Assembly: GCF_902459465.1 (NCBI RefSeq)
Contig: NC_047081.1
Location: forward strand, 372,001 to 436,000
DNA: 64,000 bases
Source of the DNA: Asterias rubens
Lineage: Eukaryota
Direction: 5' to 3'
Below are positions 3,001 through 61,100 of this stretch, piece after piece; the first letter of the stretch is position 1, and every line of letters starts with the position of its first letter. The notes beneath the pieces were generated by a model that saw only the letters and a list, made by a program, of their open reading frames with translations, searched no databases and was not told where the DNA came from. The translations under genes were made by a program, and so were the position numbers.

Positions 3001-6000
3001 ATATTATAATGTTAAAACGCATACAATTATAAGCTGTTGCAAACTGCTATACATTTTGACTCTGTTTTTCTTGAAGGCAAGACTTCAGAAATATTGACTT
3101 TATGCTCATACGTCATTAATTATTCAAGACATTTAACATTAAACTTGAAACAAATATTCCAATAATATTGGAATTATGGAAATTGAATCAAATTCATTTA
3201 TGATCCACAAGGAAAAAGAAAAGAAAATTCTACATTGGGTCCGCCTATTTATTTCTGCGAAAGAAATTGTTTACAATGCTGGCACTATGATGCAGTCACT
3301 GATGTCATCTGACATTTAAAATTTGACACAGACACACACTACAATAGCAATCTCAACAGAAAACTACATGTCTGGCTTTATGTTCAGATCCTATGAGGAT
3401 AGAATACCGTGGAAATGCTGACACTGCGATTCTTCATTCTCAAGTTCCGTATTGAAAACACAGACTTTACAAAAATGATAATTTCTAGTTTTCTAAAATG
3501 AAAAGACATCTAGCCCTGGGCAATGACAAGCAGGCCTGATACTTCCCTGAGGCAACGGAGGCGATTGCCTTCGTTGCCCCCTGCCATTGCCTTGGTGCCC
3601 TTGTAATGCTCACAGTAGAAATTTACAATTTCCTCATAGGGTACCCTTTGCCAACGAGAAAATGCCTTGGTGCCTTTGCCCTTTCAAAAACGAAGCATAA
3701 AAGGACAAGAAATCTAGCCCTGGCCAATGACAAGACACCTAGCCCTGGCCAATGACGAGACATCTAGCCCTGGCCAATGACCAGGGGCAGGAAGGCAATG
3801 ACCAGGGGCAGGGGAGGCCATGACCAGGGGCAGGGGAGGCCATGACCAGGGGCATGGAGGCAATGACCAGGGGCATGGAGGCAATGACCAGGGGCATTGA
3901 GGCAATGACCAGGGGCATGGAGGCAATGACCAAGGGCATGGAGGCAATGACTAGGGGCATGGAGGCAATGGCCAGGGGCATGGAGGCAATGACCAGGGGA
4001 ATGGAGGCAATGACCAAGGGCATGGAGGCAATGACCAGGGGCATGGAGGCAATGACCAGGGGCATGGAGGCAATGACCAGGGGCATGGAGGCAATGACCA
4101 GGGGTATGGAGGCAATGACCTGGGGCATGGAGGCAATGACAAGGGGCATGGAGGCAATGACCAGGGGCATGGAGGCAATACTAGGGGCATGGAGGCAATG
4201 ACTAGGGGCATTGAGGCATTGACCTGGGGCATGGAGGAAATGACCAGGGGCATTGAGGCAATGACCAGGGGCAGGGAGGCTATGACCAGGGGCATGGAGG
4301 CAATGACCAGGGGCATGGAGGAAATGACCACGGGCAGGGAGGCAATGACCAGGGGAATGGAGGCAAGGACCAGTGGGATGGAGGCAATGACCAGGGGCAT
4401 GGAGGCAATGACCAGGGGAATGAAGGCAAGGACCAGTGGTATAGAGGCAATGACCAGGGGAATGCAAGCAATGACAAGAGGCAGGCAAAGGCAATGACCA
4501 GGGGCATGGAGGCAATGACCAGGGGTATGGAGGCAATGACCTGGGGCATGGAGGCAATGACAAGGGGCATTGGAGGCAATGACCAGGGGAATGAAGGCAA
4601 TAACCAGAGGCTTGGAGGCAATGACCAGAGGCTTGGAGGCAATGACCAGTGACTTGGAGGCAATGACTAGGGGCATGAAGGCCATTACCAGGGGCAAAGA
4701 GGCAATCAAGGGGGCATAGAGGCAATCAAGGGGGCATAGAGGCAATGACTAGAGGGCCTCCACTGCCCCATGACGTATAAGGCCTGCAACTGTATACTTT
4801 AAACTCAAGGTAAACACCAAACTACTTGAAAATTAAAGCAAGCTACATGTATTCAACATCTAGACAAGGCCATGGCTTAATTACATACGATGGAACGACG
4901 GAACATCGCCAGTAGAACTATCTCTTTATTGATTCTTCCCACTATATTTTACCTGTAGATAATGCACATTATGTGCATGACTGTCTTGGCTGATTACCAT
5001 TGATCCAATTCATGGGATGTCTTTTTCTATTTTTGTATTTTATGCACAAGTGCTTCTTGACTTACATAAAACTTAAATTATGTGTTGTGTTTTAGAACTG
5101 CGTATGTACACCTATACGCTGTACTATGTTCAGATTATCAGATTGTTGAAATGCAGCCATGACTAAAAACAAGTGTGTCTTCATTCTTCTCTTAATGCAT
5201 TCAGGGAGTCTACCTTTCACAATCAAAGACTCCTGGGGGAGAAATATATTCTGGCATCTTGGATAAAAACAAAAAAATGGCCTTGTTCTTTTTTTTCAGG
5301 CCCAAAACGACAACCTGTTAACTTTTGTTATGTATAAAAAAATGTTCTCAAACAGGTTTTCCTTCTTTTGTTACAGTTCCATTTTATTAGATGCAATCAT
5401 TAAATGCCAAGGGTTTCCATGGAAACCCTACAATACTCTGCTTATTGCAAAAGAGATGACACGTATGAAAAAAGGTCTGTGTTACTCAATGCTTGACAAA
5501 TTTCAAAGCAATTTGTAGATCACCGTTTCTTTTATTGTTCTCAATAAAGAAACAGGTATGAACACCAGTTAATTTTCTGCTTGATTGCAATACAAGTAGG
5601 CCTACCATACTTCATTTGTGTTCTATTTTGAGTGTTGTTGATTTTAATGCAGGGATTACATGGAAAGAACTTGGCCTCATTTTTAATACTCGTTTTATAA
5701 CCGATAAAATTGTCGCAATTAATTGAAAATGTTCACATTATTCCAAGCAAAAAAATATATAAAAATTAATTAGGCCTAAATAGGGCTTTCTCCAATAGAC
5801 GATCAGAGCATATTGATCAAAACGTCAAGTTGAAACCAACTGTTCTTTTTAGAACCACCACAACTCAATAGAGATAGTCATTACATTGTATTTTTTCCAC
5901 CATGCAAAGTAAGTTACAAATCCTACATAAAAAACCCTAATAAAGTAAAGTAATAGACATTTAGCAACAGTTTCTGCCAATTGTGATGTTCATGACAGGC

Positions 6001-46667: not shown

Positions 46668-49493
46668 TTACTTCTGGTCCGGGTGAACCTTGTTCAAGCA
46701 CATTACAGTCTTCAAGCAATGTTTGAAGATCGTTAGGACGAATAGGATGATCTCAAAGAGTGTAATGGATGAGATTCCAACGTAGAGTCCCATCAGGCCA
46801 CCAACAGAACCAAGGATGCTCTCAAACTGTAAGTAAGAATATCATTCATGTTGGTCATAACATTACCATTGCCGTGTTGTGGCCAGCGGATAAGGGCACC
46901 GGACTCAAGCTCTGGTGTTTCTAATCAGCAGATTGTGTGTGTAATTGAGTCCCGGTCGTGACACTTGTGTCCTTAATAAGCAAGACACTTTAATAACCAT
47001 GACTGCTTTGTCCTTCAGATGGGACGTAAAGACGTTGGACTCGTGCGTTGTGTACAACGCGTAAAAGAACCCAGTGCACTTATTGAAAAGAGAAGGGGTT
47101 CACCCTGTGCTCCTTGTTTGATTGGCTGCATGTTGCCCCATGGCACCTTGTTAACCATTACATGGTGCTATGTTCAAAATAATGAGTAGTCTCATACTTC
47201 AAACGTAGCCCCACAATCAATATTTTTCAAAGATAGGATTCACTTGTGACAAACAATGGAACATGAATATTAACTCTCCTACTCTTTGACCAATTAATAT
47301 CGTCCACTGTGGTTTTGAATGATAGATGCACTTTGCTAGCCTGCATATAATATCATGGCGTGAATGCATATACAAAGTACACAGTCAACTGTCTGACCAT
47401 TTACCGATGTGGTTGGGAGGGATGGCAACTTTTCTGCTAAATGTTGCCAACAATAATTATGAGAGATTTCTTGACGGGTATTCAACAGACTATGCATCAC
47501 CACATAGTGTGGTAACTTTTCTGCTATATAATACCAACAATATGAGAGTTAATTGAGATTGCTTGAAAGGTATTCAACATATTATCTTGGATATGAACTT
47601 ACCGTCCATGATGGTACCTCAGTCACCGATTGGTAATTCAACTCCTCAAAGTAAATGTGCAAACGGGCCATGTTCTTCCTGCGATCAAGGACAAATTTAG
47701 TAGTCTTTATAACAAAGTTACTTGTATCCAACTAAAGTTTCTTACTTAAGAAACAGTTGGGCTTGCGCCAAAGGTAGGCTTAGCCTAATCATACTGTATT
47801 ATTGAAACAAGTCTAACTGTAGTTTGGCAAAGCCTACTCCAAGACGAGGCCTGACTCCTACGTTGAATACAATAACAGTTTAATGGGTGAATTGGCGCCC
47901 TGCCAAGAAAAGGCAAAAATATAGCTTGCGGGGTTGATCATCACTTTTTATTTGTTTATATTTTCACTTTTTGAATTGTTTTAAAAACCCACAGATTTTA
48001 AAAAGAATCTGCCGAAGACATGATGGATGTTTTTGTGTGAAATGTACACCTTCATTCCTCACGAGAATTTGTTTAAAGTAATTCATTAAAATAAAGTAAA
48101 AATCTCCTTAAAAATGCCAGTCGGGTATGGAAATAAGAAACAGGGAACTAATTTTGTTTGGCGACGTGGTTTATAACTTAGGGACATAGAGCGCCCTCAT
48201 GTGGTGGAAAAGTACTCAGATTTTTGTCTCACCTCGTGGTCTCCACATCTTGCAGAATTCTTGCCGCCACTTCGTTCTTCTCAGCTACACGACTGTACAA
48301 ATGCTCCTGAAAGATTAAATCATACCGCATCAAAATTAAACGGTAACGGCTAATGGCTAATACGACGCAGCCTTAGCCACTTCTGAAGCGGTCAAAGCCG
48401 TGGCTCGAAAGGAGAGAATAATAACATTTATTCAAACTCAAATTCTTCCCTGACTTTCTGACATTTCATGTGCGTGTCAGCGCCATTGCAGTGAGCCATC
48501 CGAATGGCGCCACCAACGGCGAGCATGACTCTCCACTTTCAAATACCCAAAAAGGTTAGTCTGAACTTATAGTTAAAACTTATAAGGGTGCCAGGACTGC
48601 CATTGATTATAACGTCTAGTAGGACTTTGAAATTACACGTATACTTCAGGTAACTACCCTTGCATAATCATTGTTTTCTACTACGTCTTGCAATATGAAA
48701 CCCACCTCATAGCGTTCAGACGGCCACACAGCCACGGACGAGCTAACCTGGAAACCAGTTTCCCTACAAAGAAAACGAACAATGTTCAATGTACAATCAT
48801 TTAAAGATTTTGTATTCATTTTCATTTAACTTGCATTTATTTGCACTTGTTTTATACCAGGGACATAGTGCCAAAAGATGGCGGCCAAAAGGGGTTTAGG
48901 AGATGTAGAGTAGCATTATCAACGCGCGCCGTTCTTGTTTTAATGCAAACTTTTATAGACGTGTTGGCGTTAACAAAAAAAGGTGGAATTTCCCCTCTTT
49001 TTAGGCCCATTTTCTTGGCAACAAGTTACGTGTACTTACTCGCAGGCTACTGGGCAGTAACAGTCAAGCTTGTCATCTTCATAAAGTGTCTCCACGAGCT
49101 GTCTACATCTCTCTGCAAATCAAAACGATCAAAACATACACTTCACATGAACACAATTTCAACCGCAAATTGCTCTAACACTGATGGGAACATGATGGAA
49201 CTTTGCTGACATCACGCCCAATTTTCTGTACAGTAATGTACTAGGTTCGTTTTACGTGCGATACACTACCCACGGGACCTACGGCTTTACGTCCCATCCG
49301 GAGGACGAAGCAATAGTGTTAGCAATTAAGGACACAAGAGTGTCAAGATCGGGACTTGAACACCGGCACCCTGTGTATCAGAAACACCAGAGCTTGAGTC
49401 AGGTGCTCTTATTCGCCCGGCCGCTACACGCCAAGTTATGTATAACCTACATTATCTTCAATGATCGATATTCTTACTTGTCCGCCCTCTCTC

Positions 49494-49539
<46 letters not shown>

Positions 49540-52500
49540 AATATGAATAAGTTAATAACTAAACCCTGATTGATTATAATTTTCAATGAACTTACGTTGT
49601 GTGCTGTTAAGAAAGCTGCACTTTTCACCTTCGAGTAGCAGATCTGAGACGCAGCCGCATGACTCCCTAAGATTCCTCTGCATACATTGCTTCTTACAAG
49701 CCAGTGGTGAATACGTGAAGAAGTCTGACTCGAAAAGAGTATCGCTACCGTCGGTGCAATTACTGTACTTCCCGCCAAGACGATCAATGAAAGTCTGTAG
49801 GTAAAACAAAGGGACAAAGGTCGTGGGTTCGAATCTCACTCGAGTAAATGCCTGTGATCAGAACTCGGGAAAGTTTGTTTTACCCTTTCAGTGTACGTTT
49901 ATATATTTTGTAGACTGAAAGGGTAAAACAAACTAACATCTTTATCTCCAATTCGTATCATCTTAAAAAAGGACCCCCCCCCCAAAAAAAAAATGAAAAA
50001 AAAAAAAAATGATAACTTTCAAGTCAACAGAGGGTGCCCATGGAATGTTTGGCACCCCACCTTCACCCATACCATAAACAATACCTTTCTGATAGCAATT
50101 GAGGTCGCCTGACCAGTGGAGGCAGTGAGACCCGTATCTTCAGGATTGGGAGTCGTCTGCCAATCGTCAACAGAGATCCGGACCCCGGACTCCGGGGAGA
50201 AAAGTCCGACGTATTCCGGCTGTTCGATGAACAATGTAAGATGCAGACCTGTGAAGGAACATTGAACAGTTTTTTTTTAAATATTGAACGGACCGACTTC
50301 AGGCATTTTGGAACAAAAACTTGACTTCGATAGACCGGCCCTGACTGACTAAGCGGTCCAAAGTGCACCGGGTTCATGATAGTGTGAGTTCGAAATTCTG
50401 GTTCCGGTCAAGGCACTCTACTTCTTGTGCCATTACATTAAAATGGTGAACAAGTGCATTATAAACAAGTAAAAATACCATTTCTGTTGAAAACATTCCG
50501 CTCAGGTAGGTGTTAAATATCCTACTCTACTAATCTAAACTAATACAGAGTTCTCCAGGACAAACGATCACTTGCCACGCCCCGAAGCCGTAGGATGTCA
50601 CTGTGGGTTTTTGAGGGACAGCTGACGAGCATTGAGGTCTTTCCGTAGAATGTCAAGTAAGTTAGTTTTGTGACGGCCACGACGGTCTCTCAGGTGTCCC
50701 GATCTAACTACAGCGAAGGGATGTAAGCCACATGTCTAATGTGTGAAGATCCCCAGTGCACCAGAACGTTGGACGAGTGGTATGGGATAATATACTGAGA
50801 GCCCGGGCAAAACAGTAAACATGTATAATTTACTTACCATACTGCGAGCCTGACTTGCTTGTTTCCCTTGCCGTCTCATTTCGGCCGTGGTTGTACGTGA
50901 AACAGTTTCCGAACTGACTGTTTTGAAACTTGTGGAAATCACTGCATAAGAAAAAAACAACAACTTGTCGTTTTTTTTTATAGACTAGGCACTAAACTAT
51001 CGGGTAAACCCCCAGGGCAACCTTATCACGACTTTCTTCCGGCCGGACGCACCAGTTAAACCAATGGGAGACTTTCTGGGACGATAGAGGGCAGCAGACT
51101 TATCAGGTAAATCCATTGTTCTTAGAATTATGCGCATGTTCAGAACTACGTAAACGATGGAAATTTACCCGGTATGTCTGCTGCCACCTAGCGTTGGAAA
51201 GTCTCTTATTATGACAGATATTGTCATGACCCCCAATGTCAGTGCTTAATTTGTCGTCTGCGATGAGGTTCCAGCTCCCTCTAAACACCCGGGGCATCTG
51301 GGCGCTATTGCCCCGTTGGTTCTAACTGGAATGCACGCTCCCGTCCGTCCCGCTGCGTACCTTTGAGTTTGTTGCCTACAAGCTGCCTGTCAATACAACA
51401 CATTTCCCCTACAAAACACTTCAAACTTACGTATAGTTGCAAGGACGCTTGTCAAATGTACACTGCAGAATTAAGTCCTCAGCCTGATGCCCCAACACGT
51501 CCAGCTCTTCTCTGGTTGGGTTGGCAACGTTGATGATGTCACTGTAATCCTCTGATTTGGAGTTCTCTAGGAAGCCATTCCAGTCACTCTCGCCCGTGAC
51601 GTCACCGAAATCGTAGTAGTCAACGTACTCGAAGTTTTGGAAGTCTGTGCTGCCGAAACCGGTGAACCATTCATCGATGAAGGAGAAACTACCACCGGGA
51701 GTGCCGAATCCACCCCCGCCGAAACTTGCACCACCACCGCCAAAACTTCCACCCCCACCGCCAAAACTTCCACCCCCACCGCCAAAACTTCCACCCCCAC
51801 CGCCCAAACTTCCACCCCCACCGCCCAAACTTCCACCCCCACCGCCCAAACTTCCACCCCCACCGCCCAAACTTCCACCCCCACCGCCCAAACTTCCACC
51901 CCCACCGCCCAAACTTCCACCCCCACCGCCCAAACCTCCACCCCCACCGCCCAAACTTCCACCCCCACCGCCCAAACTTCCACCCCCACCGCCCAAACTT
52001 CCACCCCCACCGCCCAAACTTCCACCCCCACCTCCGATAGAGCTGCTTCCACCGGCCCTCCTCTTCCTCCCACCGCCACCACCACCGGCACCCGAAGAAA
52101 GATACGCATCAAGCCAATTAGCCTGCGAAGACCAGTCAAAAAACCAAGAATAATCGGCATCTCCTCCACTGATTCCACCATCGATGGCAATAACTCCTTC
52201 AAACCGGGTACCAACAAGCTTAGACCGCCTCAGCCTATTCATATTACACACCGTAACGGCAGGGAAACCTACGTTGGTCTTTGTGATAACATCAATTGTG
52301 GTACCGTATGGATTGCCCAAGTAATCAAGGACCAGATATGTCCCCTGGTAAGAGAAGAGCGCAAACGCACCGAGCAGAACGATCAACCAAAAAAGACCGA
52401 CAAGGCAGTTGCTGGCATTGGTAATCCTACTCACTCCATGTGCGGTTGTTTCGTTTCCAAAGTCGGTCACAATGGAGCCGATAGTCTCCTTCTGTGGATT

Positions 52501-53230
52501 GGATGGAGAAAATAAAAACACAATGTCAACAATTTACAAGTTATTTCCACGGGTTTTAAAGAAACAATCTTTCCATTTAAGTTCCAGTGAATCTGTTAAA
52601 ACTGCAGGGTCAAAATGGTCCTGGAATTCGGGTCACAGGGAGCCAGTGTAGCAGGAGATTCTGTGCCCCCCCCCCCCCCCCCCATCAATACGGGGAACTG
52701 TGTCCAAACTACATCTTATATCTTCTTTTGAGACATTGTCCTTCAGCCAACATTAATTTCCAATAGGGGGACGTCATCTCCGAGGGGTGGGGTGGAGGCA
52801 GATTACGCTGGGACACCGGACCCTTTCCATGGTCAGTATGAATCTGTCTCAAACTTACCCTGAACATGCGCGAGACTTACGCAGAACCCACCGGCGAGTC
52901 AAAGTCCGAGTATGACCCAAATATGATCCAAATAATATTAAGGGTGTATTTGGTTTTGCGGTGACCTTTAATATAGCCGTAACCTATGGGTTCTTAATCA
53001 TTCTTTTGAGGACATGCTTCTTATTATGCTAACTGGCCGCAGAGTTAATAGTATATTTTTCAGAATTCGAGCAACTTCTCAGATTTTGTCTTCGATCTTA
53101 CCTTTTTAGGGGTATCTTCTTCAGTTGATGTCTTAGGCTTCTCGTAATTGGGTGGACCAGGGTTCTCCATCGGCACGACCATAAAGGCATTGTCGTAGTT
53201 TGCACTAGACTCGATACCGGTCATCGTCAT
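46668..53230 (-). CDS. DEG/ENaC (ASIC-related) amiloride-sensitive channel subunit, 698 aa; exons 53230-53102, 52491-51431, 50941-50838, 50248-50085, 49794-49596, 49112-49040, 48763-48706, 48306-48233, 47678-47603, 46826-46668
   Basis: Ten GT-AG exons with consistent phases (0,2,1,0,1,2,0,2,0) total 2097 nt. Motifs: TTAHG gating motif, TM1, FPAVTVCNMN, LILQCTFD, FGNCFTYN, GLHLTLFIEQPEY, Cys-rich thumb, CYCPVACE, IYFEELNY, and TM2 GSVGGLMGLYVGISSITLFE. Confidence 0.95.
46870..47210 (+). mobile_element. tRNA-headed SINE with DeuSINE/Nin-like core
   Basis: tRNA-like head, gtgtcctt...gcaagacactt, and core gatgggacgtaaag...gtaaaagaacccagtgcactt...gaaaagagaaggggttc. Reverse copies at 49245-49420 and 9549-9662. 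Confidence 0.7.
49245..49420 (-). mobile_element. SINE, DeuSINE-like family, reverse copy
   Basis: Reverse complement contains ggatgggacgtaaagccgtaggtcccg and the tRNA-like head. Confidence 0.7.
49485..49534. repeat. (CT)n microsatellite
   Basis: Direct inspection. Confidence 0.95.
51068..51205. mobile_element. Palindromic MITE, family D, in a DEG/ENaC intron
   Basis: TIRs gagactttc and gaaagtctc. Internal arms gagggcagcaga and tctgctgccacctagcg. Confidence 0.75.
51722..52036. repeat. Coding 21-bp minisatellite, 15 units, encoding GGGGGS(L/F) on the minus strand
   Basis: Unit aaacttccacccccaccgccc runs from 51722 to 52036, in frame inside the large DEG/ENaC exon. Confidence 0.97.
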
Positions 53231-53306
53231 TTGTTGTTTACTAAAAAAACAATTATATGTAAACAAAACCGATCAGCGCACTCGTAATTCATATCAGTGT
53301 AGTACT

Positions 53307-53695
53307 TTAAAGGCACTGGACACTATTGGTAGCTACTACAAAACAATTATTGTTAGCATAAAAACTTACTTGATAACGAGCAATTGAGAGCTGTTGATAG
53401 TATAAAACATTGTGAGAAACGGCTCCCACCGAACATAGTTTCAAGAAAGAGGTAATTTTATTATCACTGAAATAATACAGTTCGGCTGAAGCCTTTTATT
53501 GTGCATTATGGAAGCACACACGTGATGCAACAAGTGTGTTTTTCTTTCATTTTCCTCTTGCAAATTCACAGAGAAACATTGAGTCCAAATTTCACAGGTT
53601 TATTACTTTGCATATGTTGGGATACACCAAGTGATGAAACTGGTCTTTGACAATATTACCAAACATGCCTTTAAAGGGCCTGTGCATATACGCAT
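53307..53695 (+). mobile_element. ~390-bp MITE related to family B
   Basis: Starts ttaaaggcactggacactattgg. A related reverse-oriented copy lies at about 55085-55436. Confidence 0.7.
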
Positions 53696-58119: not shown

Positions 58120-61100
58120 ATGAGTTATAATCAAGGACCGGCCGGTTATAATCAACAACAGAACTATGGTGTCCCGTCTTCGCAGGCGGGGAGAAATCGT
58201 AGTCAATATGGCGGACCCGCCCCAAACAATTATTACGGAGGAGGGGTAAATGCCCAGCCCCCGCCGCCCAGTAGTGGTGGCCCACCACCAATGGGCCCAC
58301 CACCCCAGGGCAAACAACCAATCGGTGCCTTTGGAGAAGGGCGAGGGAATCCTCCTCAGCAACAGGGTTACGGGGCACCAGCTATGAACGGTCCATCCAG
58401 CCATGGTACCCCACCCCCTACGTCAAATCAACACCAACCGTACGGCCAACCAGGACAAAATGGTTACAGTAGTATGCCGCCGACAACGCAAGGCGCTCCG
58501 ATGGGGTACAGTGGTGGTCAACCAAACAGGTGAGAAGTGTACAATTTATTCAAGGGATTAGGTTTCGCCTCTTCATACATTGACCAATCAAAACCAAGTG
58601 TCATGGCTGGGATTTGAACCCCCTTTGCAATAATAGCCTAGCAACCAGAACTGAAGTGCACTAGACTGCTCAGCCCACATGACACATTAAATTCAATCAC
58701 AACATGTAAACTAAGGTCATTAGTGTTAATTTTGAGCAGAAAAAAAAAAATGATACAACGTGCTGGGGTGGCATTGAGATTCAAATTCCACTGTAAAAAG
58801 GGGCTGAAGTTGATTGCCGCCACTGGTGAAGAAATACATTTTTCAGATCAAACTCTACAGATAGAGACCAATTATGGGGTGATTTTGAAAATATTGGATG
58901 TTTTCCTTCTCAACAATTCAAAATGTTGTTAAAACTTCAATGTTTTGTTATCATCTGGTAGAGTTCCAGCTCAGCCTGGACCTCCTAACCAACCTCCATC
59001 TAGCCAGCCAGGATTCTATCAGCCACAGCCACCACAGCAGCCACAGCCGCCTCAGCAGCCACAGCCGCCACAGCAGCCACAGTCGCCACAGCAGCCACAG
59101 TATGGTGCTACGCAAGGCCAGCTGTCCAACCAAATGAATAATATGAGTCTTAGTGGACCACCTCAAGGGCCTGCTCAAGGGTCACCCCAAGGACCCCCTT
59201 CAGGACCCCCTGCAGGACCCCCCCAAGGAATGGTAAGTAGACAATTGAATGGTGGTTATTTTAATTTAATTTTATTTATTTATTTGATTACACATCCATC
59301 AGCACAATTAGCGCCAACAAAAGGATGCATAGGAAACGAGAAGAAATCTTCAGTTTTAGATTTGGGACTGAAAACCCAATCCACATGCAAGTCTGGGGTG
59401 GAATTCGAACCATGGTTCACAGAAGTGAAATGCAGGGAAAGAAACCACTGAGCCAACCTGATCCCCAGATTTGAGCATGAACCCCAGACCCGATCCAACC
59501 TGTCAGTGAGTCAGGCAGCATGAACCCCAGACCCGATCCAACCTGTCAGTGAGTCAGGCCGGGAATTACACTGAGGCCATACTTTGCTATGGTGTTTTCA
59601 GATGGTATGGGTGTCAAAAAGATTGATAAATTTTTGTAAAATATTCATGAGCAGATTATAATTTTATGGCTAATTATGGTAAGATGATACCAATGATAAC
59701 GAAACTAACTTTCCAATTATTATCTTAACCACCTCAGGGTGCACCACCAACAAACATGGGTCGAAGCCAACCTCCAATGATGAGTGGTCCACCCCCAACA
59801 TCAAGTATGTCAGGTCCACCTCCTGCCAGCAGGCCAGGTCAGCCTCCAACCAGTATGTATGCCCCCCCGCAACCAGGTCAGACCAACATGGCCCCGCCGT
59901 CGATGTACCCACAACAAGGTGGTGGATACAATGCAACTCAGCCCGCTGGTGGTGGAGCCCCTGCACCGTACTCGATAGGTGGAGCTCCCCAGCCGAGCAG
60001 TATGGGATATCAACCATCGGGGTCAGGTCCGACACCCCCGATGTCACCAGCTAGTGGGATGCCTAGACCAGGGGGTCCTCAGCAGTATAGTGGAATGGGA
60101 CAGCCAGGAATGGGACAGCCAGGGATGGGGCAGCCAGGTGTACGGCAACCAGGAATGGCCCAGCCAGGAATGGGCCAACCAGGAATGGCCAATCCAGGAA
60201 TGGGCCAACCAGGAATGTCCCATCCTGGAATGGGCCAACCTGGTATTCAACAGCAGCCTCAGCAACCACAGAAGAAGCTTGACCCTGATCAGATGCCGAG
60301 TGTGGTAAGTGTGGATCAAACCCCACTCATAGTTCAGTACCCATTCAATGTCCAGAATCCATTTAGAGTTCAGAAAACATTTACGGAAAGAACCCATTCA
60401 CAGTCCAGAACTCATTCGATGTCCAGAACCTGTTCAATGTCCAGAACCCTTTCAAAGTATAAAGGCAACACTGGTCTGCTGTGTTCTGTTGCAAGTTTGC
60501 ATGTCCAAATTACTGAACTTCTTTGATAACAGTCTGGTACCCGTTTCAGTCCTGCTTCAGTTTTTACAACATGTAGCATTTCCCCTCTATGATCACTGAA
60601 CACAAGAGTCCAGACATAAAATTGAAATTCTCCTTTATTCCTTTTTAGATTCAAGTTATACAGGACGACAGAAAGAACAAGGGAAACCAACAGTTTATCA
60701 CAAATATCCGAGGACAATGTCCCCCTCTAGTGACAACGGACTTCCAGGTCATTGATCAAGGTATGCAGGGGTTTTCCCCTCTTTTGTTTTCATTTGCCTG
60801 CCTGATGAGTTAACCCAAAGTTTGAGTAGACCTGAAACTTTTTTAGTAAAATCTCTTGTTTTCTTCCACCAAGCTTCGGTTTTTTCCTTCAACAAATGCA
60901 TTCATTACAAGTTTTAGTATCTCTTGTATTGTTTGTTTGTACCCATACACAGATGTGCATTAAAGCCATTGGACACTTGGTTAACAGTACTGTCCAAGGC
61001 CAACACTTCGTGTATCACAACTTATATATGAAATAACAAACTTGTGAAAATTTAGGCTCAATCGGTCATCGGAGTCGGGTAAAAATAACGGGAAAACCCA

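What the first reader, a model, noticed from the sequence alone, without database searches (positions are those of the whole stretch)
51722..52075. DEG/ENaC channel with a furin-type RKRR site followed by a 105-aa (GGGGGS-L/F)x15 repeat in the finger domain
Seen: between FPAVTVCNMN and LILQCTFD the in-frame exon reads ...SSGAGGGGGGRKRRAGGSSSI, then GGGGG(S/G)L x11, GGGGGSF x3 and GGGGASF. The array is a nearly homogeneous 21-bp minisatellite, and every other channel motif and splice site is intact. Established: this interval is the variable finger domain, and furin cleavage there activates vertebrate alpha and gamma ENaC. Inference: this may be a protease-gated channel with a length-polymorphic glycine-loop tether that sets the reach of an inhibitory segment, or acts as an extracellular or mechanosensory linker. 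I know of no DEG/ENaC with such an insert, but cannot confirm novelty without a search.
Basis: partly seen in the sequence, partly recalled or inferred. Interest (0 to 1): 0.82.

Follow-up and report, generated by a model that had tools for sequence, protein, structure and literature searches.

The report
Starfish sodium-channel gene with glycine repeat
A starfish (Asterias rubens) DEG/ENaC ion-channel gene really does carry, in a disordered outer loop, a furin-type RKRR site followed by fifteen in-frame GGGGGS-L/F repeats; the site belongs to a conserved pattern across invertebrate relatives that resembles the protease switch of vertebrate ENaC, but no cleavage has been shown.

Summary
The minus-strand exon 51431-52491 belongs to A. 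rubens LOC117303933, a DEG/ENaC subunit of 696 aa. It encodes RKRR (aa 183-186) and then 15 heptads (aa 194-298) from a 21-bp array found nowhere else in the genome.

- **Transcription:** spliced RNA contigs from four studies confirm the exon borders. They run into the array from both sides, and no splice skips it.
- **Structure:** AlphaFold2 gives a confident DEG/ENaC fold, with aa 178-309 disordered.
- **Site:** across 28 relatives, the variable finger holds 35 R-x-[KR]-R motifs against 1.1 expected by chance. The rest of these proteins holds 2. The relatives are echinoderms, hemichordates, an annelid and a nemertean. Many carry two sites flanking a conserved tract, as ENaC alpha and gamma do. 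The window protein keeps only the distal site.
- **Repeat:** the Patiria miniata orthologue has an equivalent (GGGGGSV)n array with a different serine codon family, but no polybasic site.

Best reading: the loop is probably cut by a proprotein convertase, and the repeat is a spacer constrained in composition. ENaC-like gating is unproven. This is a new variant of a known kind.

The parts
46668..53224 (-). Coding span of A. rubens LOC117303933 (protein P0016, 696 aa), a DEG/ENaC channel subunit. The ATG is at 53224 and the stop near 46668.
   Evidence: tblastn of P0016 on the window; spliced RNA contigs; Pfam ASC.
53102..53224 (-). Coding part of exon 1 (aa 1-41). This is the cytoplasmic N-terminus and contains PPNY at aa 24-27.
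   Evidence: The RNA joint 52491|53102 has GT..AG ends (X9 record 20, which extends to 53242).
51431..52491 (-). Exon 2 (aa 42-395): HG motif, TM1, FPAVTVCN, the whole finger region, and LILQCTFD.
   Evidence: Both borders are fixed by RNA joints 52491|53102 and 50941|51431.
52132..52155 (-). Conserved aromatic block DYSWFFDW (aa 154-161), which opens the variable part of the finger.
   Evidence: Alignment A1; predicted helical at moderate pLDDT.
51688..52083 (-). Predicted disordered loop (aa 178-309). It contains the poly-Gly run, RKRR, AGGSSSI and the heptad array.
   Evidence: AlphaFold2 with 116 sequences gives pLDDT below 50 for 178-192 and 194-309, against 90 or more for most of the rest.
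52057..52068 (-). RKRR (aa 183-186), a proprotein-convertase/furin consensus R-x-[KR]-R. P1' is Ala187, followed by GGSSS.
   Evidence: The same R|AG(G)SSS context occurs in Lytechinus P0015, Diadema P0013 and ophiuroid-like P0006.
51721..52035 (-). 21-bp coding minisatellite of 15 units (aa 194-298): (GGGGGSL)x4, GGGGGGL, (GGGGGSL)x6, (GGGGGSF)x3, GGGGASF. A degenerate 16th unit lies at 51700-51720.
   Evidence: RNA contigs reach 51763 from the 3' side and 52003 from the 5' side.
51475..51687 (-). Conserved acidic/aromatic block that closes the finger (aa 310-380), F.F.Y.DYYD...E.DW.GF...S..D.SD...ANPTREEL..LGHQAED.
   Evidence: Alignment A1; helices with pLDDT 68-97.
50836..50941 (-). Exon 3 (GNCFTYN motif).
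50085..50246 (-). Exon 4.
49596..49794 (-). Exon 5.
46668..46826 (-). Last coding exon: TM2 with the G-I-S selectivity-filter motif (GLYVGISSITLFE) and a short C-terminus.

Best explanation
The feature is a real, expressed, in-frame coding minisatellite inside the extracellular finger loop of a DEG/ENaC channel subunit (A. rubens LOC117303933).

The loop (aa 178-309) is intrinsically disordered and sits between two conserved aromatic/acidic blocks. It has two parts.

1. RKRR186|A. This is the retained distal site of an ancestral polybasic pattern shared by a clade that includes echinoderms, hemichordates, an annelid and a nemertean. The most likely mechanism is cleavage by a furin-like proprotein convertase in the secretory pathway. 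That would give a two-chain subunit: an N-terminal fragment of about 21 kDa and a C-terminal fragment of about 52 kDa. This step is inferred.

2. A G5-S-hydrophobic heptad array of about 105 aa. After cleavage it would be the flexible N-terminal tail of the C-terminal chain. The array turns over at the DNA level by slippage or unequal exchange. Its composition, period and approximate length are kept between distant starfish, so I read it as a selected flexible or elastic spacer. This step is also inferred.

The protein has one site and no intervening tract. ENaC-style release of an inhibitory peptide is therefore not expected in this protein, although it is plausible in its sea-urchin and hemichordate relatives.
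For: Shown:
- Sequence and repeat.
- The unit is unique in the genome.
- Exon borders come from spliced RNA contigs in four runs from four studies. The contigs enter the array from both sides and no joint skips it.
- NCBI's model includes the array.
- The fold is DEG/ENaC, with TMt 0.72-0.78 to ASIC1 and FaNaC, and aa 178-309 have pLDDT below 50.
- The insert falls where ENaC alpha 142-274 lies.
- There are 35 R-x-[KR]-R motifs in 6549 aa of variable finger, against 1.1 expected from shuffles. The remaining 8960 aa hold 2, and 21 of 28 proteins have at least one.
- 47 of 52 basic clusters end in Arg, and P1' is S, A, D, N, Q or G in 43 of 52.
- The same R|AG(G)SSS context occurs in urchins and an ophiuroid-like fragment.
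- Proprotein-convertase P-domains are present in the genome.
- The Patiria orthologue has a 21-bp array of 15.8 copies encoding GGGGGSV/L, with TCT Ser codons against AGT in Asterias.
Against: - No protein-level evidence of cleavage exists.
- The Patiria orthologue lacks the site, as do Amphiura P0010, Antedon P0008 and four urchin paralogues, so the site is dispensable in some lineages.
- Only one site is present here.
- The enrichment counts are not phylogenetically independent.
- The RNA contigs stop inside the array, so full retention and copy number in mRNA are not proven.
- Similar Gly/Ser arrays could arise in parallel from an ancestral poly-Gly tract by slippage alone.
Confidence: 0.6

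Rival explanations
1. The array is a neutral low-complexity expansion. The finger loop tolerates any disordered filler, the array is a by-product of replication slippage in an old poly-Gly tract, and RKRR is a relic that no longer matters in starfish.
For: - Nine of 15 units are nucleotide-identical, so the expansion or homogenisation is recent.
- Inserts at this position differ wildly in sequence and length between paralogues, from 75 aa to over 1100 aa.
- The Patiria orthologue lost the site.
- Asterias AGT Ser is one step from GGT Gly, which fits an independent origin.
Against: - The same heptad grammar, with similar length, occurs in two starfish orders despite different Ser codon families.
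- G-rich tracts with periodic L, Y or W also occur in the sea-urchin orthologues.
- All four basic residues of the 182-aa core form a perfect convertase motif, in a context shared with urchins.
Confidence: 0.25
2. The polybasic patch is a matrix anchor rather than a cleavage site. It would bind sulfated glycans or matrix, and the glycine array would act as an elastic tether for mechanical gating.
For: - DEG/ENaC channels are proposed to need extracellular tethers (PMC6955349, abstract seen).
- The loop is long, flexible and exposed.
Against: - The basic clusters follow protease grammar rather than charge alone. Arg is the last residue in 47 of 52 clusters, and a small or polar residue follows.
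- Many relatives have two sites bracketing a conserved acidic tract.
- Patiria keeps the array without any basic patch.
Confidence: 0.1
3. The array is an artefact or is not in the mature protein. Either it is an assembly error or it is spliced out through cryptic sites.
For: - Short-read RNA contigs have no coverage over 51858-51988.
- The unit contains GT and AG dinucleotides.
- Patiria isoform X3 lacks exactly two units.
Against: - The coverage gap is expected, because k-mer contigs cannot cross a 21-bp repeat.
- Contigs from four runs read one to two units into the array from both sides, and no joint lies inside exon 2.
- An independent assembly of another genus has an equivalent array.
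Confidence: 0.04

Closest known systems
Vertebrate ENaC alpha and gamma subunits, activated by furin/prostasin cleavage in the finger (GRIP) region
   Same: - Same superfamily. The best sequence matches among solved structures are human ENaC alpha, beta and gamma, at E 7e-48 to 1e-44.
- The polybasic site occupies the topologically equivalent stretch between TM1/beta-strands and the LxxxCxF strand.
- Human gamma ENaC uses the very tetrad RKRR (PMC8791634, Table 1).
- Urchin, hemichordate, annelid and nemertean relatives have two sites bracketing a tract, like ENaC.
   Different: - It is not an ENaC orthologue. ENaC subunits were not found outside vertebrates, and the GRIP domain is described as unique to ENaC (PMC8791634).
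- The model shows disorder here, not a GRIP-like sheet.
- There is one site only and no tract.
- There is no C-terminal PY motif, though PPNY sits in the N-terminus.
- Cleavage and its effect are untested.
A. rubens paralogues LOC117295705 (L001) and the L002 gene, and their Patiria, Acanthaster and A. amurensis orthologues (P0001-P0004, P0019)
   Same: Same clade, same exon structure and same insert position. Each has a polybasic site (RKKR, or RRRR plus RKRR) followed by the same acidic/aromatic block.
   Different: Their inserts are Ser/Thr/Gly-rich and mucin-like, 220-380 aa long, and are not heptad minisatellites. The L002 group has two sites 10-11 aa apart.
Patiria miniata LOC119731823 (P0192, P0199), the orthologue
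   Same: - 72% identical overall.
- Same length for isoform X2 (696 aa).
- A 21-bp array of 15.8 copies encodes (GGGGGSV)x13 and (GGGGGSL)x2, followed by (GGGSL)x4, at the same place.
   Different: - No polybasic site: GGGGGGGGNSSV stands where Asterias has GGGGGGRKRRAGGSSSI.
- The Ser codon is TCT rather than AGT, and Val replaces Leu/Phe.
ASIC1 and FaNaC (solved structures)
   Same: Best structural matches to the model, with Foldseek E about 1e-28 and TMt 0.72-0.78. The palm, beta-ball, thumb and TM architecture is the same.
   Different: Their fingers are compact (about 90 aa in ASIC1) and have no disordered insert. They are gated by protons or peptides. No evidence here bears on the gating stimulus.

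Membership tests
DEG/ENaC superfamily (Pfam PF00858, ASC) | Profile match over the curated cut-off | tested here: met
   Exon 2 scores 72.5 bits against a 23.6-bit cut-off. Of the two later exon ORFs tested, one passes the cut-off (27.6 bits) and one falls below it (18.6 bits). The full protein is annotated PF00858.
DEG/ENaC superfamily (Pfam PF00858, ASC) | Two transmembrane helices, a large Cys-rich ectodomain, the HG motif, FPAVTxCN, GNC(F/Y)TFN, and G/S-x-S in TM2 | tested here: met
   TTAHG, FPAVTVCN, GNCFTYN and GISS in TM2 can be read in P0016. Conserved cysteines are nearly invariant in A2.
DEG/ENaC superfamily (Pfam PF00858, ASC) | Three-dimensional fold of a channel subunit | tested here: met
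   The AlphaFold2 model has pLDDT 78 and pTM 0.71. Foldseek top hits are ASIC1a and FaNaC, with probability 1.00 and TMt 0.72-0.78.
Protease-activated ENaC-type subunit (alpha/gamma) | Two polybasic cleavage sites in one subunit bracketing an inhibitory tract | tested here: not met
   The disordered loop of P0016 holds only RKRR183-186. RLRR127-130 is an invariant structural motif next to a strand. Relatives in urchins, hemichordates, an annelid and a nemertean do have two or more sites.
Protease-activated ENaC-type subunit (alpha/gamma) | GRIP domain (beta-strands carrying the tract) | tested here: inconclusive
   The model shows helices flanking a disordered segment and no extra sheet. Foldseek's top 50 are ASIC and FaNaC, not ENaC. 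A prediction cannot exclude order on assembly.
Protease-activated ENaC-type subunit (alpha/gamma) | Orthology to vertebrate SCNN1 genes | not tested
   No vertebrate sequences were put in the tree. The literature states that ENaC subunits were not found outside vertebrates (PMC8791634).
Protease-activated ENaC-type subunit (alpha/gamma) | Cleavage that changes open probability | not testable with these tools
   This needs biochemistry and electrophysiology.
Proprotein-convertase (furin) substrate | R-x-[KR]-R followed by a small or polar P1', in a lumenal/extracellular and accessible segment | tested here: met
   RKRR|AG lies between TM1 and TM2, in a segment with pLDDT below 50. Convertase P-domains are present in the genome.
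Proprotein-convertase (furin) substrate | Actual cleavage | not testable with these tools
   No proteomic or blot data were available.

The most novel reading that the evidence does not exclude
A bilaterian clade of DEG/ENaC channels, seen in echinoderms, hemichordates, annelids and nemerteans, may use convertase cleavage in the finger as a maturation or gating switch. Many members have paired sites that bracket a conserved acidic-aromatic tract. This would be an ENaC-like release-of-inhibition mechanism that arose outside vertebrates, either independently of them or long before them. In starfish the tract would have been replaced by a G5-S-hydrophobic heptad array, kept for over 200 million years as an elastic element whose length tunes the channel.
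Probability: 0.3. Interest if true: 0.8.

Novelty: new variant of a known kind. Interest (0 to 1): 0.6.

Why it matters
Proteolytic activation is treated as a speciality of vertebrate ENaC that co-evolved with life on land (PMC8791634). This survey found a roughly 30-fold excess of convertase motifs in the finger loops of marine invertebrate relatives. These motifs are often paired around a conserved tract. That pattern suggests the finger loop is a recurrent or ancient site of proteolytic control in this channel superfamily.

The survey also yields concrete constructs to test: sea-urchin LOC100891818, the Ptychodera and Owenia proteins, and this starfish gene. The starfish heptad array is a natural (G5S-X)n linker inside a channel ectodomain. 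It is shared in kind by two starfish orders, and it gives a tractable case for asking whether linker length and elasticity matter for gating.

Tried and rejected
- **First AlphaFold2 run:** with only 14 aligned sequences the model was unusable (pLDDT 48). It was replaced by a 116-sequence alignment.
- **High RNA depth in the intron (51063-51210):** there was no Rfam family and no tRNA. The depth is explained by a high-copy palindromic repeat, not by a feature of the channel.
- **RLRR at aa 127-130:** I considered it as a possible upstream cleavage site and rejected it as unlikely. It is invariant, directly follows the FPAVTVCN strand, is part of a wider N-x-x-R-x-S motif in distant relatives, and has pLDDT above 90.
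- **P0006 source:** The look-up of encoding contigs returned no DNA and no taxon.
- **P0192:** isoform X2 was not on record. Isoform X1 worked.
- **Asterias amurensis orthologue:** none of the window gene was found in the protein database, so within-genus variation in unit number could not be measured.
- **Literature:** searches for the gene identifiers, for convertase sites in invertebrate DEG/ENaC fingers, and for glycine-rich inserts found no prior description. Absence from this library is not proof of novelty.
- **Earlier scan notes:** they held nothing beyond the finding itself.
Full report
**1. What is in the sequence.**

The minus strand of 51431-52491 is one open exon. It reads from the HG motif and TM1 through FPAVTVCNMN to LILQCTFD. 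Inside it, SSGAGGGGGG-RKRR-AGGSSSI is followed by 15 heptads:
- ten GGGGGSL;
- one GGGGGGL;
- three GGGGGSF;
- one GGGGASF.

The RKRR codons are at 52057-52068 and the array is at 51721-52035. Tandem Repeats Finder reports a 21-bp period, 15.1 copies and 97% matches. Nine units are identical in DNA. The two-unit pattern occurs nowhere else in the 417.6-Mb assembly.

**2. Which gene it is.**

The exon matches Pfam ASC at E 4.8e-20. Of the two downstream exon ORFs tested, one passes the Pfam cut-off and one falls just below it. A database search returned the window's own product, NCBI 'uncharacterized protein LOC117303933 [Asterias rubens]' (XP_033644289.1, 696 aa). That model contains the entire array. 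tblastn places its ten coding exons between 53224 and 46668 on the minus strand.

**3. Whether the array is in the RNA.**

I laid Logan contigs from three marine metatranscriptomes and one run labelled with an organism, four studies in all, on 49500-53400. They contain spliced contigs with GT..AG joints at 52491|53102, 50941|51431, 50246|50836 and 49794|50085.

Contigs continue from unique exon sequence into the array on both sides. X9 record 18 runs 51431-51763. X9 record 20 runs 52003-52491 and is joined to exon 1. No joint lies inside exon 2. The lack of coverage in the middle of the array is what a k-mer assembly gives for a 21-bp repeat. So the edges of the array are transcribed and no splice that removes it was seen. 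Full retention and copy number in mRNA remain unproven.

**4. Where it sits in the protein.**

phmmer against PDB sequences gives human ENaC alpha, beta and gamma as best hits (E 7e-48 to 1e-44), ahead of ASIC1 (1e-39). Query residues 32-131 align to ENaC alpha 42-141, and residues 374-676 align to alpha 275-575. The unaligned stretch 132-373 therefore corresponds to the ENaC finger/GRIP interval.

An AlphaFold2 model built on 116 relatives is confident overall (pLDDT 78, pTM 0.71). It matches ASIC1a and FaNaC structures with TMt 0.72-0.78. Residues 178-192 and 194-309 have pLDDT below 50. Together they cover the poly-Gly run, RKRR, AGGSSSI and the array. The flanking blocks are helical: DYSWFFDW... 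upstream and the acidic/aromatic block downstream.

The site is therefore extracellular and, in the model, exposed. No GRIP-like sheet is predicted.

**5. The polybasic site is part of a clade-wide pattern.**

Two A. rubens paralogues on another chromosome have the same exon architecture. Each has a long Ser/Thr/Gly-rich insert and a polybasic site before the same acidic/aromatic block:
- L001 has RKKR|SIRNIR;
- L002 has RRRR|STDLDERKRR|ALRSSS.

Database and profile searches, with names, show that the family is widespread. It occurs in starfish, brittle stars, sea urchins, sea cucumbers, crinoids, hemichordates, amphioxus, the annelid Owenia and the nemertean Lineus.

I counted strict R-x-[KR]-R motifs in 28 full-length members.

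| Region | Residues | Motifs observed | Expected from shuffles |
|---|---|---|---|
| Variable finger | 6549 | 35 | 1.1 |
| Rest of the proteins | 8960 | 2 | not computed |

Twenty-one of the 28 proteins have at least one site. Of 52 basic clusters in these loops, 47 end in Arg, and 43 are followed by S, A, D, N, Q or G. That is proprotein-convertase grammar rather than a generic charge patch. The counts are not phylogenetically independent. However, the surrounding sequence cannot be aligned, so retention by descent alone is unlikely. Convertase P-domains are present in the genome.

**6. Two sites around a tract in many relatives, one site here.**

Examples of paired sites, with the sequence between them:
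- S. purpuratus: RKKR|AMPYDNLFQDFESVP...RVAR|GASSSS.
- L. pictus: RKKR|ALPYDNLFEDFEMVP...RVAR|AGGSSS.
- Diadema: RRRR|DTPYDNFFDDFELVP...REKR|AGSSSS.
- Ptychodera: RRRRR|AADNVDNQEPSLDEFHP...RKKR|AASSSS.
- Glandiceps: an RRRR|SLERGYGNEEPSFDEFHP tract.
- Owenia: RKKR|...RRKR|.
- Lineus: three sites.

This layout resembles the double cleavage that frees inhibitory tracts from ENaC alpha and gamma. Human gamma ENaC uses RKRR itself (PMC8791634).

The window protein keeps only the distal site. Its context, R|AGGSSS, is identical to that of the distal site in Lytechinus and close to those of Diadema and the ophiuroid-like fragment P0006 (RRRR|AGSSSS). The tree places the window protein in a weakly supported echinoderm clade (77/77). 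That clade is polytomous with the brittle-star and urchin 'A' proteins.

The simplest history is that the distal site is ancestral, and that the proximal site and the tract were lost in the starfish and brittle-star lineage of this orthogroup. The site was also lost outright in some members: Amphiura P0010, Antedon P0008, four urchin paralogues and the Patiria orthologue.

**7. The repeat is not an Asterias oddity.**

The Patiria miniata orthologue is LOC119731823. It is 72% identical overall, and isoform X2 is also 696 aa. At the same place it reads GGGGGGGGNSSV, then (GGGGGSV)x13, (GGGGGSL)x2 and (GGGSL)x4.

Its genomic array has a 21-bp period, 15.8 copies and 93% matches. The unit is GGC GGT GGA GGT GGT TCT GTC, against GGC GGT GGG GGT GGA AGT TTG in Asterias.

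The serine is kept but is encoded by the other codon family, and the hydrophobic residue differs. So the peptide grammar (five Gly, Ser, one hydrophobic residue), the period and the approximate length are shared by two starfish orders. By my own knowledge, those orders separated roughly 200 million years ago or more. Meanwhile the DNA has been homogenised separately in each.

Sea-urchin orthologues also have G-rich tracts with periodic L, Y or W: GGGGGGSLGSSGGGSLGGSGGGM before the first site, and (G6-7 SSS Y/W)n after the second.

This argues for constraint on composition and period. It does not exclude parallel slippage from an old poly-Gly seed. Patiria isoforms X1 and X3 differ by exactly two heptads, which is a weak hint of length variation or cryptic in-frame splicing.

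**8. Mechanism, with what is shown and what is inferred.**

Shown:
- the array is exonic, in frame and transcribed at its edges;
- the loop is extracellular and predicted disordered;
- it carries a perfect convertase motif that is conserved in context.

Inferred:
- a furin-like enzyme cuts after Arg186 in the secretory pathway, giving a two-chain subunit;
- the glycine array then forms a flexible tail of about 120 residues on the C-terminal chain, next to the acidic/aromatic finger block;
- selection keeps the array flexible and of bounded length.

With a single site there is no released tract, so ENaC-type relief of inhibition is not predicted for this protein. It is a reasonable hypothesis for the two-site relatives. 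The gating stimulus is unknown.

**9. Comparison with the literature, and novelty.**

The eLife 2022 study describes the GRIP domain as unique to ENaC. It found no ENaC subunits in non-vertebrate chordates, and it ties double cleavage to the move onto land. Broad DEG/ENaC phylogenies that include echinoderm and hemichordate sequences do not discuss this feature. Searches for the gene identifiers and for convertase sites or glycine-rich inserts in invertebrate fingers found nothing.

The gene itself is already annotated as an uncharacterised protein. What is new is the reading:
- a conserved convertase-site pattern in the finger of an invertebrate clade;
- a conserved heptad array in starfish.

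I class this as a new variant of a known kind, at moderate to high interest. All functional claims still await experiment.

Noticed in passing
window 51058-51212 (intron between exons 2 and 3): An element of about 152 bp with at least 1548 first-look candidates in the genome. The 40 scored copies are 95-97% identical and lie across the genome. Each also matches itself on the opposite strand at about 73%. It looks like a young palindromic MITE-like repeat. It explains RNA depths up to about 5.8e5 in run X9. It has no Rfam family and no tRNA.
   Followed up: partly
window 3775-4757: A second large 21-bp minisatellite of 46.7 copies at 87% matches, with unit CAATGACCAGGGGCATGGAGG. It is open in several frames, for example (MTRGMEA)n. 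It gave spurious tblastn hits to the glycine array. Its gene context was not examined.
   Followed up: no
window 53144-53155 (minus strand; aa 24-27 of P0016): A PPNY (PPxY-type) motif in the cytoplasmic N-terminus. Patiria has LPNY at the matching place. ENaC carries its Nedd4-binding PY motif in the C-terminus. This may be a ubiquitin-ligase docking site.
   Followed up: no
window 52102-52113 (minus strand; aa 127-130, RLRR): The motif N-R-x-R-R-S directly after FPAVTVCN is invariant in the echinoderm clade and also fits R-x-R-R. It lies in a confidently folded segment and is probably structural. It has to be excluded when convertase motifs are counted.
   Followed up: partly
L001 (G000:C11:16304500-16308500) and L002 (G000:C11:16334500-16339000): Two paralogous channel genes about 30 kb apart on another chromosome. 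Their finger inserts are mucin-like and Ser/Thr/Gly-rich, roughly 185-360 aa long, and are followed by one or two polybasic sites. L002's insert contains its own imperfect GTGGSSE(G)GTGVGSSG repeats.
   Followed up: partly
P0029, P0036, P0038 (Branchiostoma proteins, 1262-1559 aa): Amphioxus members of the same clade have finger regions of 800-1100 aa with ordinary composition, which suggests whole extra domains. One cluster includes proteins that NCBI names leucine-rich-repeat-like. A folded domain inserted into a DEG/ENaC finger would deserve its own look.
   Followed up: no
window 58120-60526 (plus strand): Long open frames rich in Pro, Gln and Gly, with PQQ and GMGQP repeats. This looks like a low-complexity protein-coding gene next to the channel gene.
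   Followed up: no
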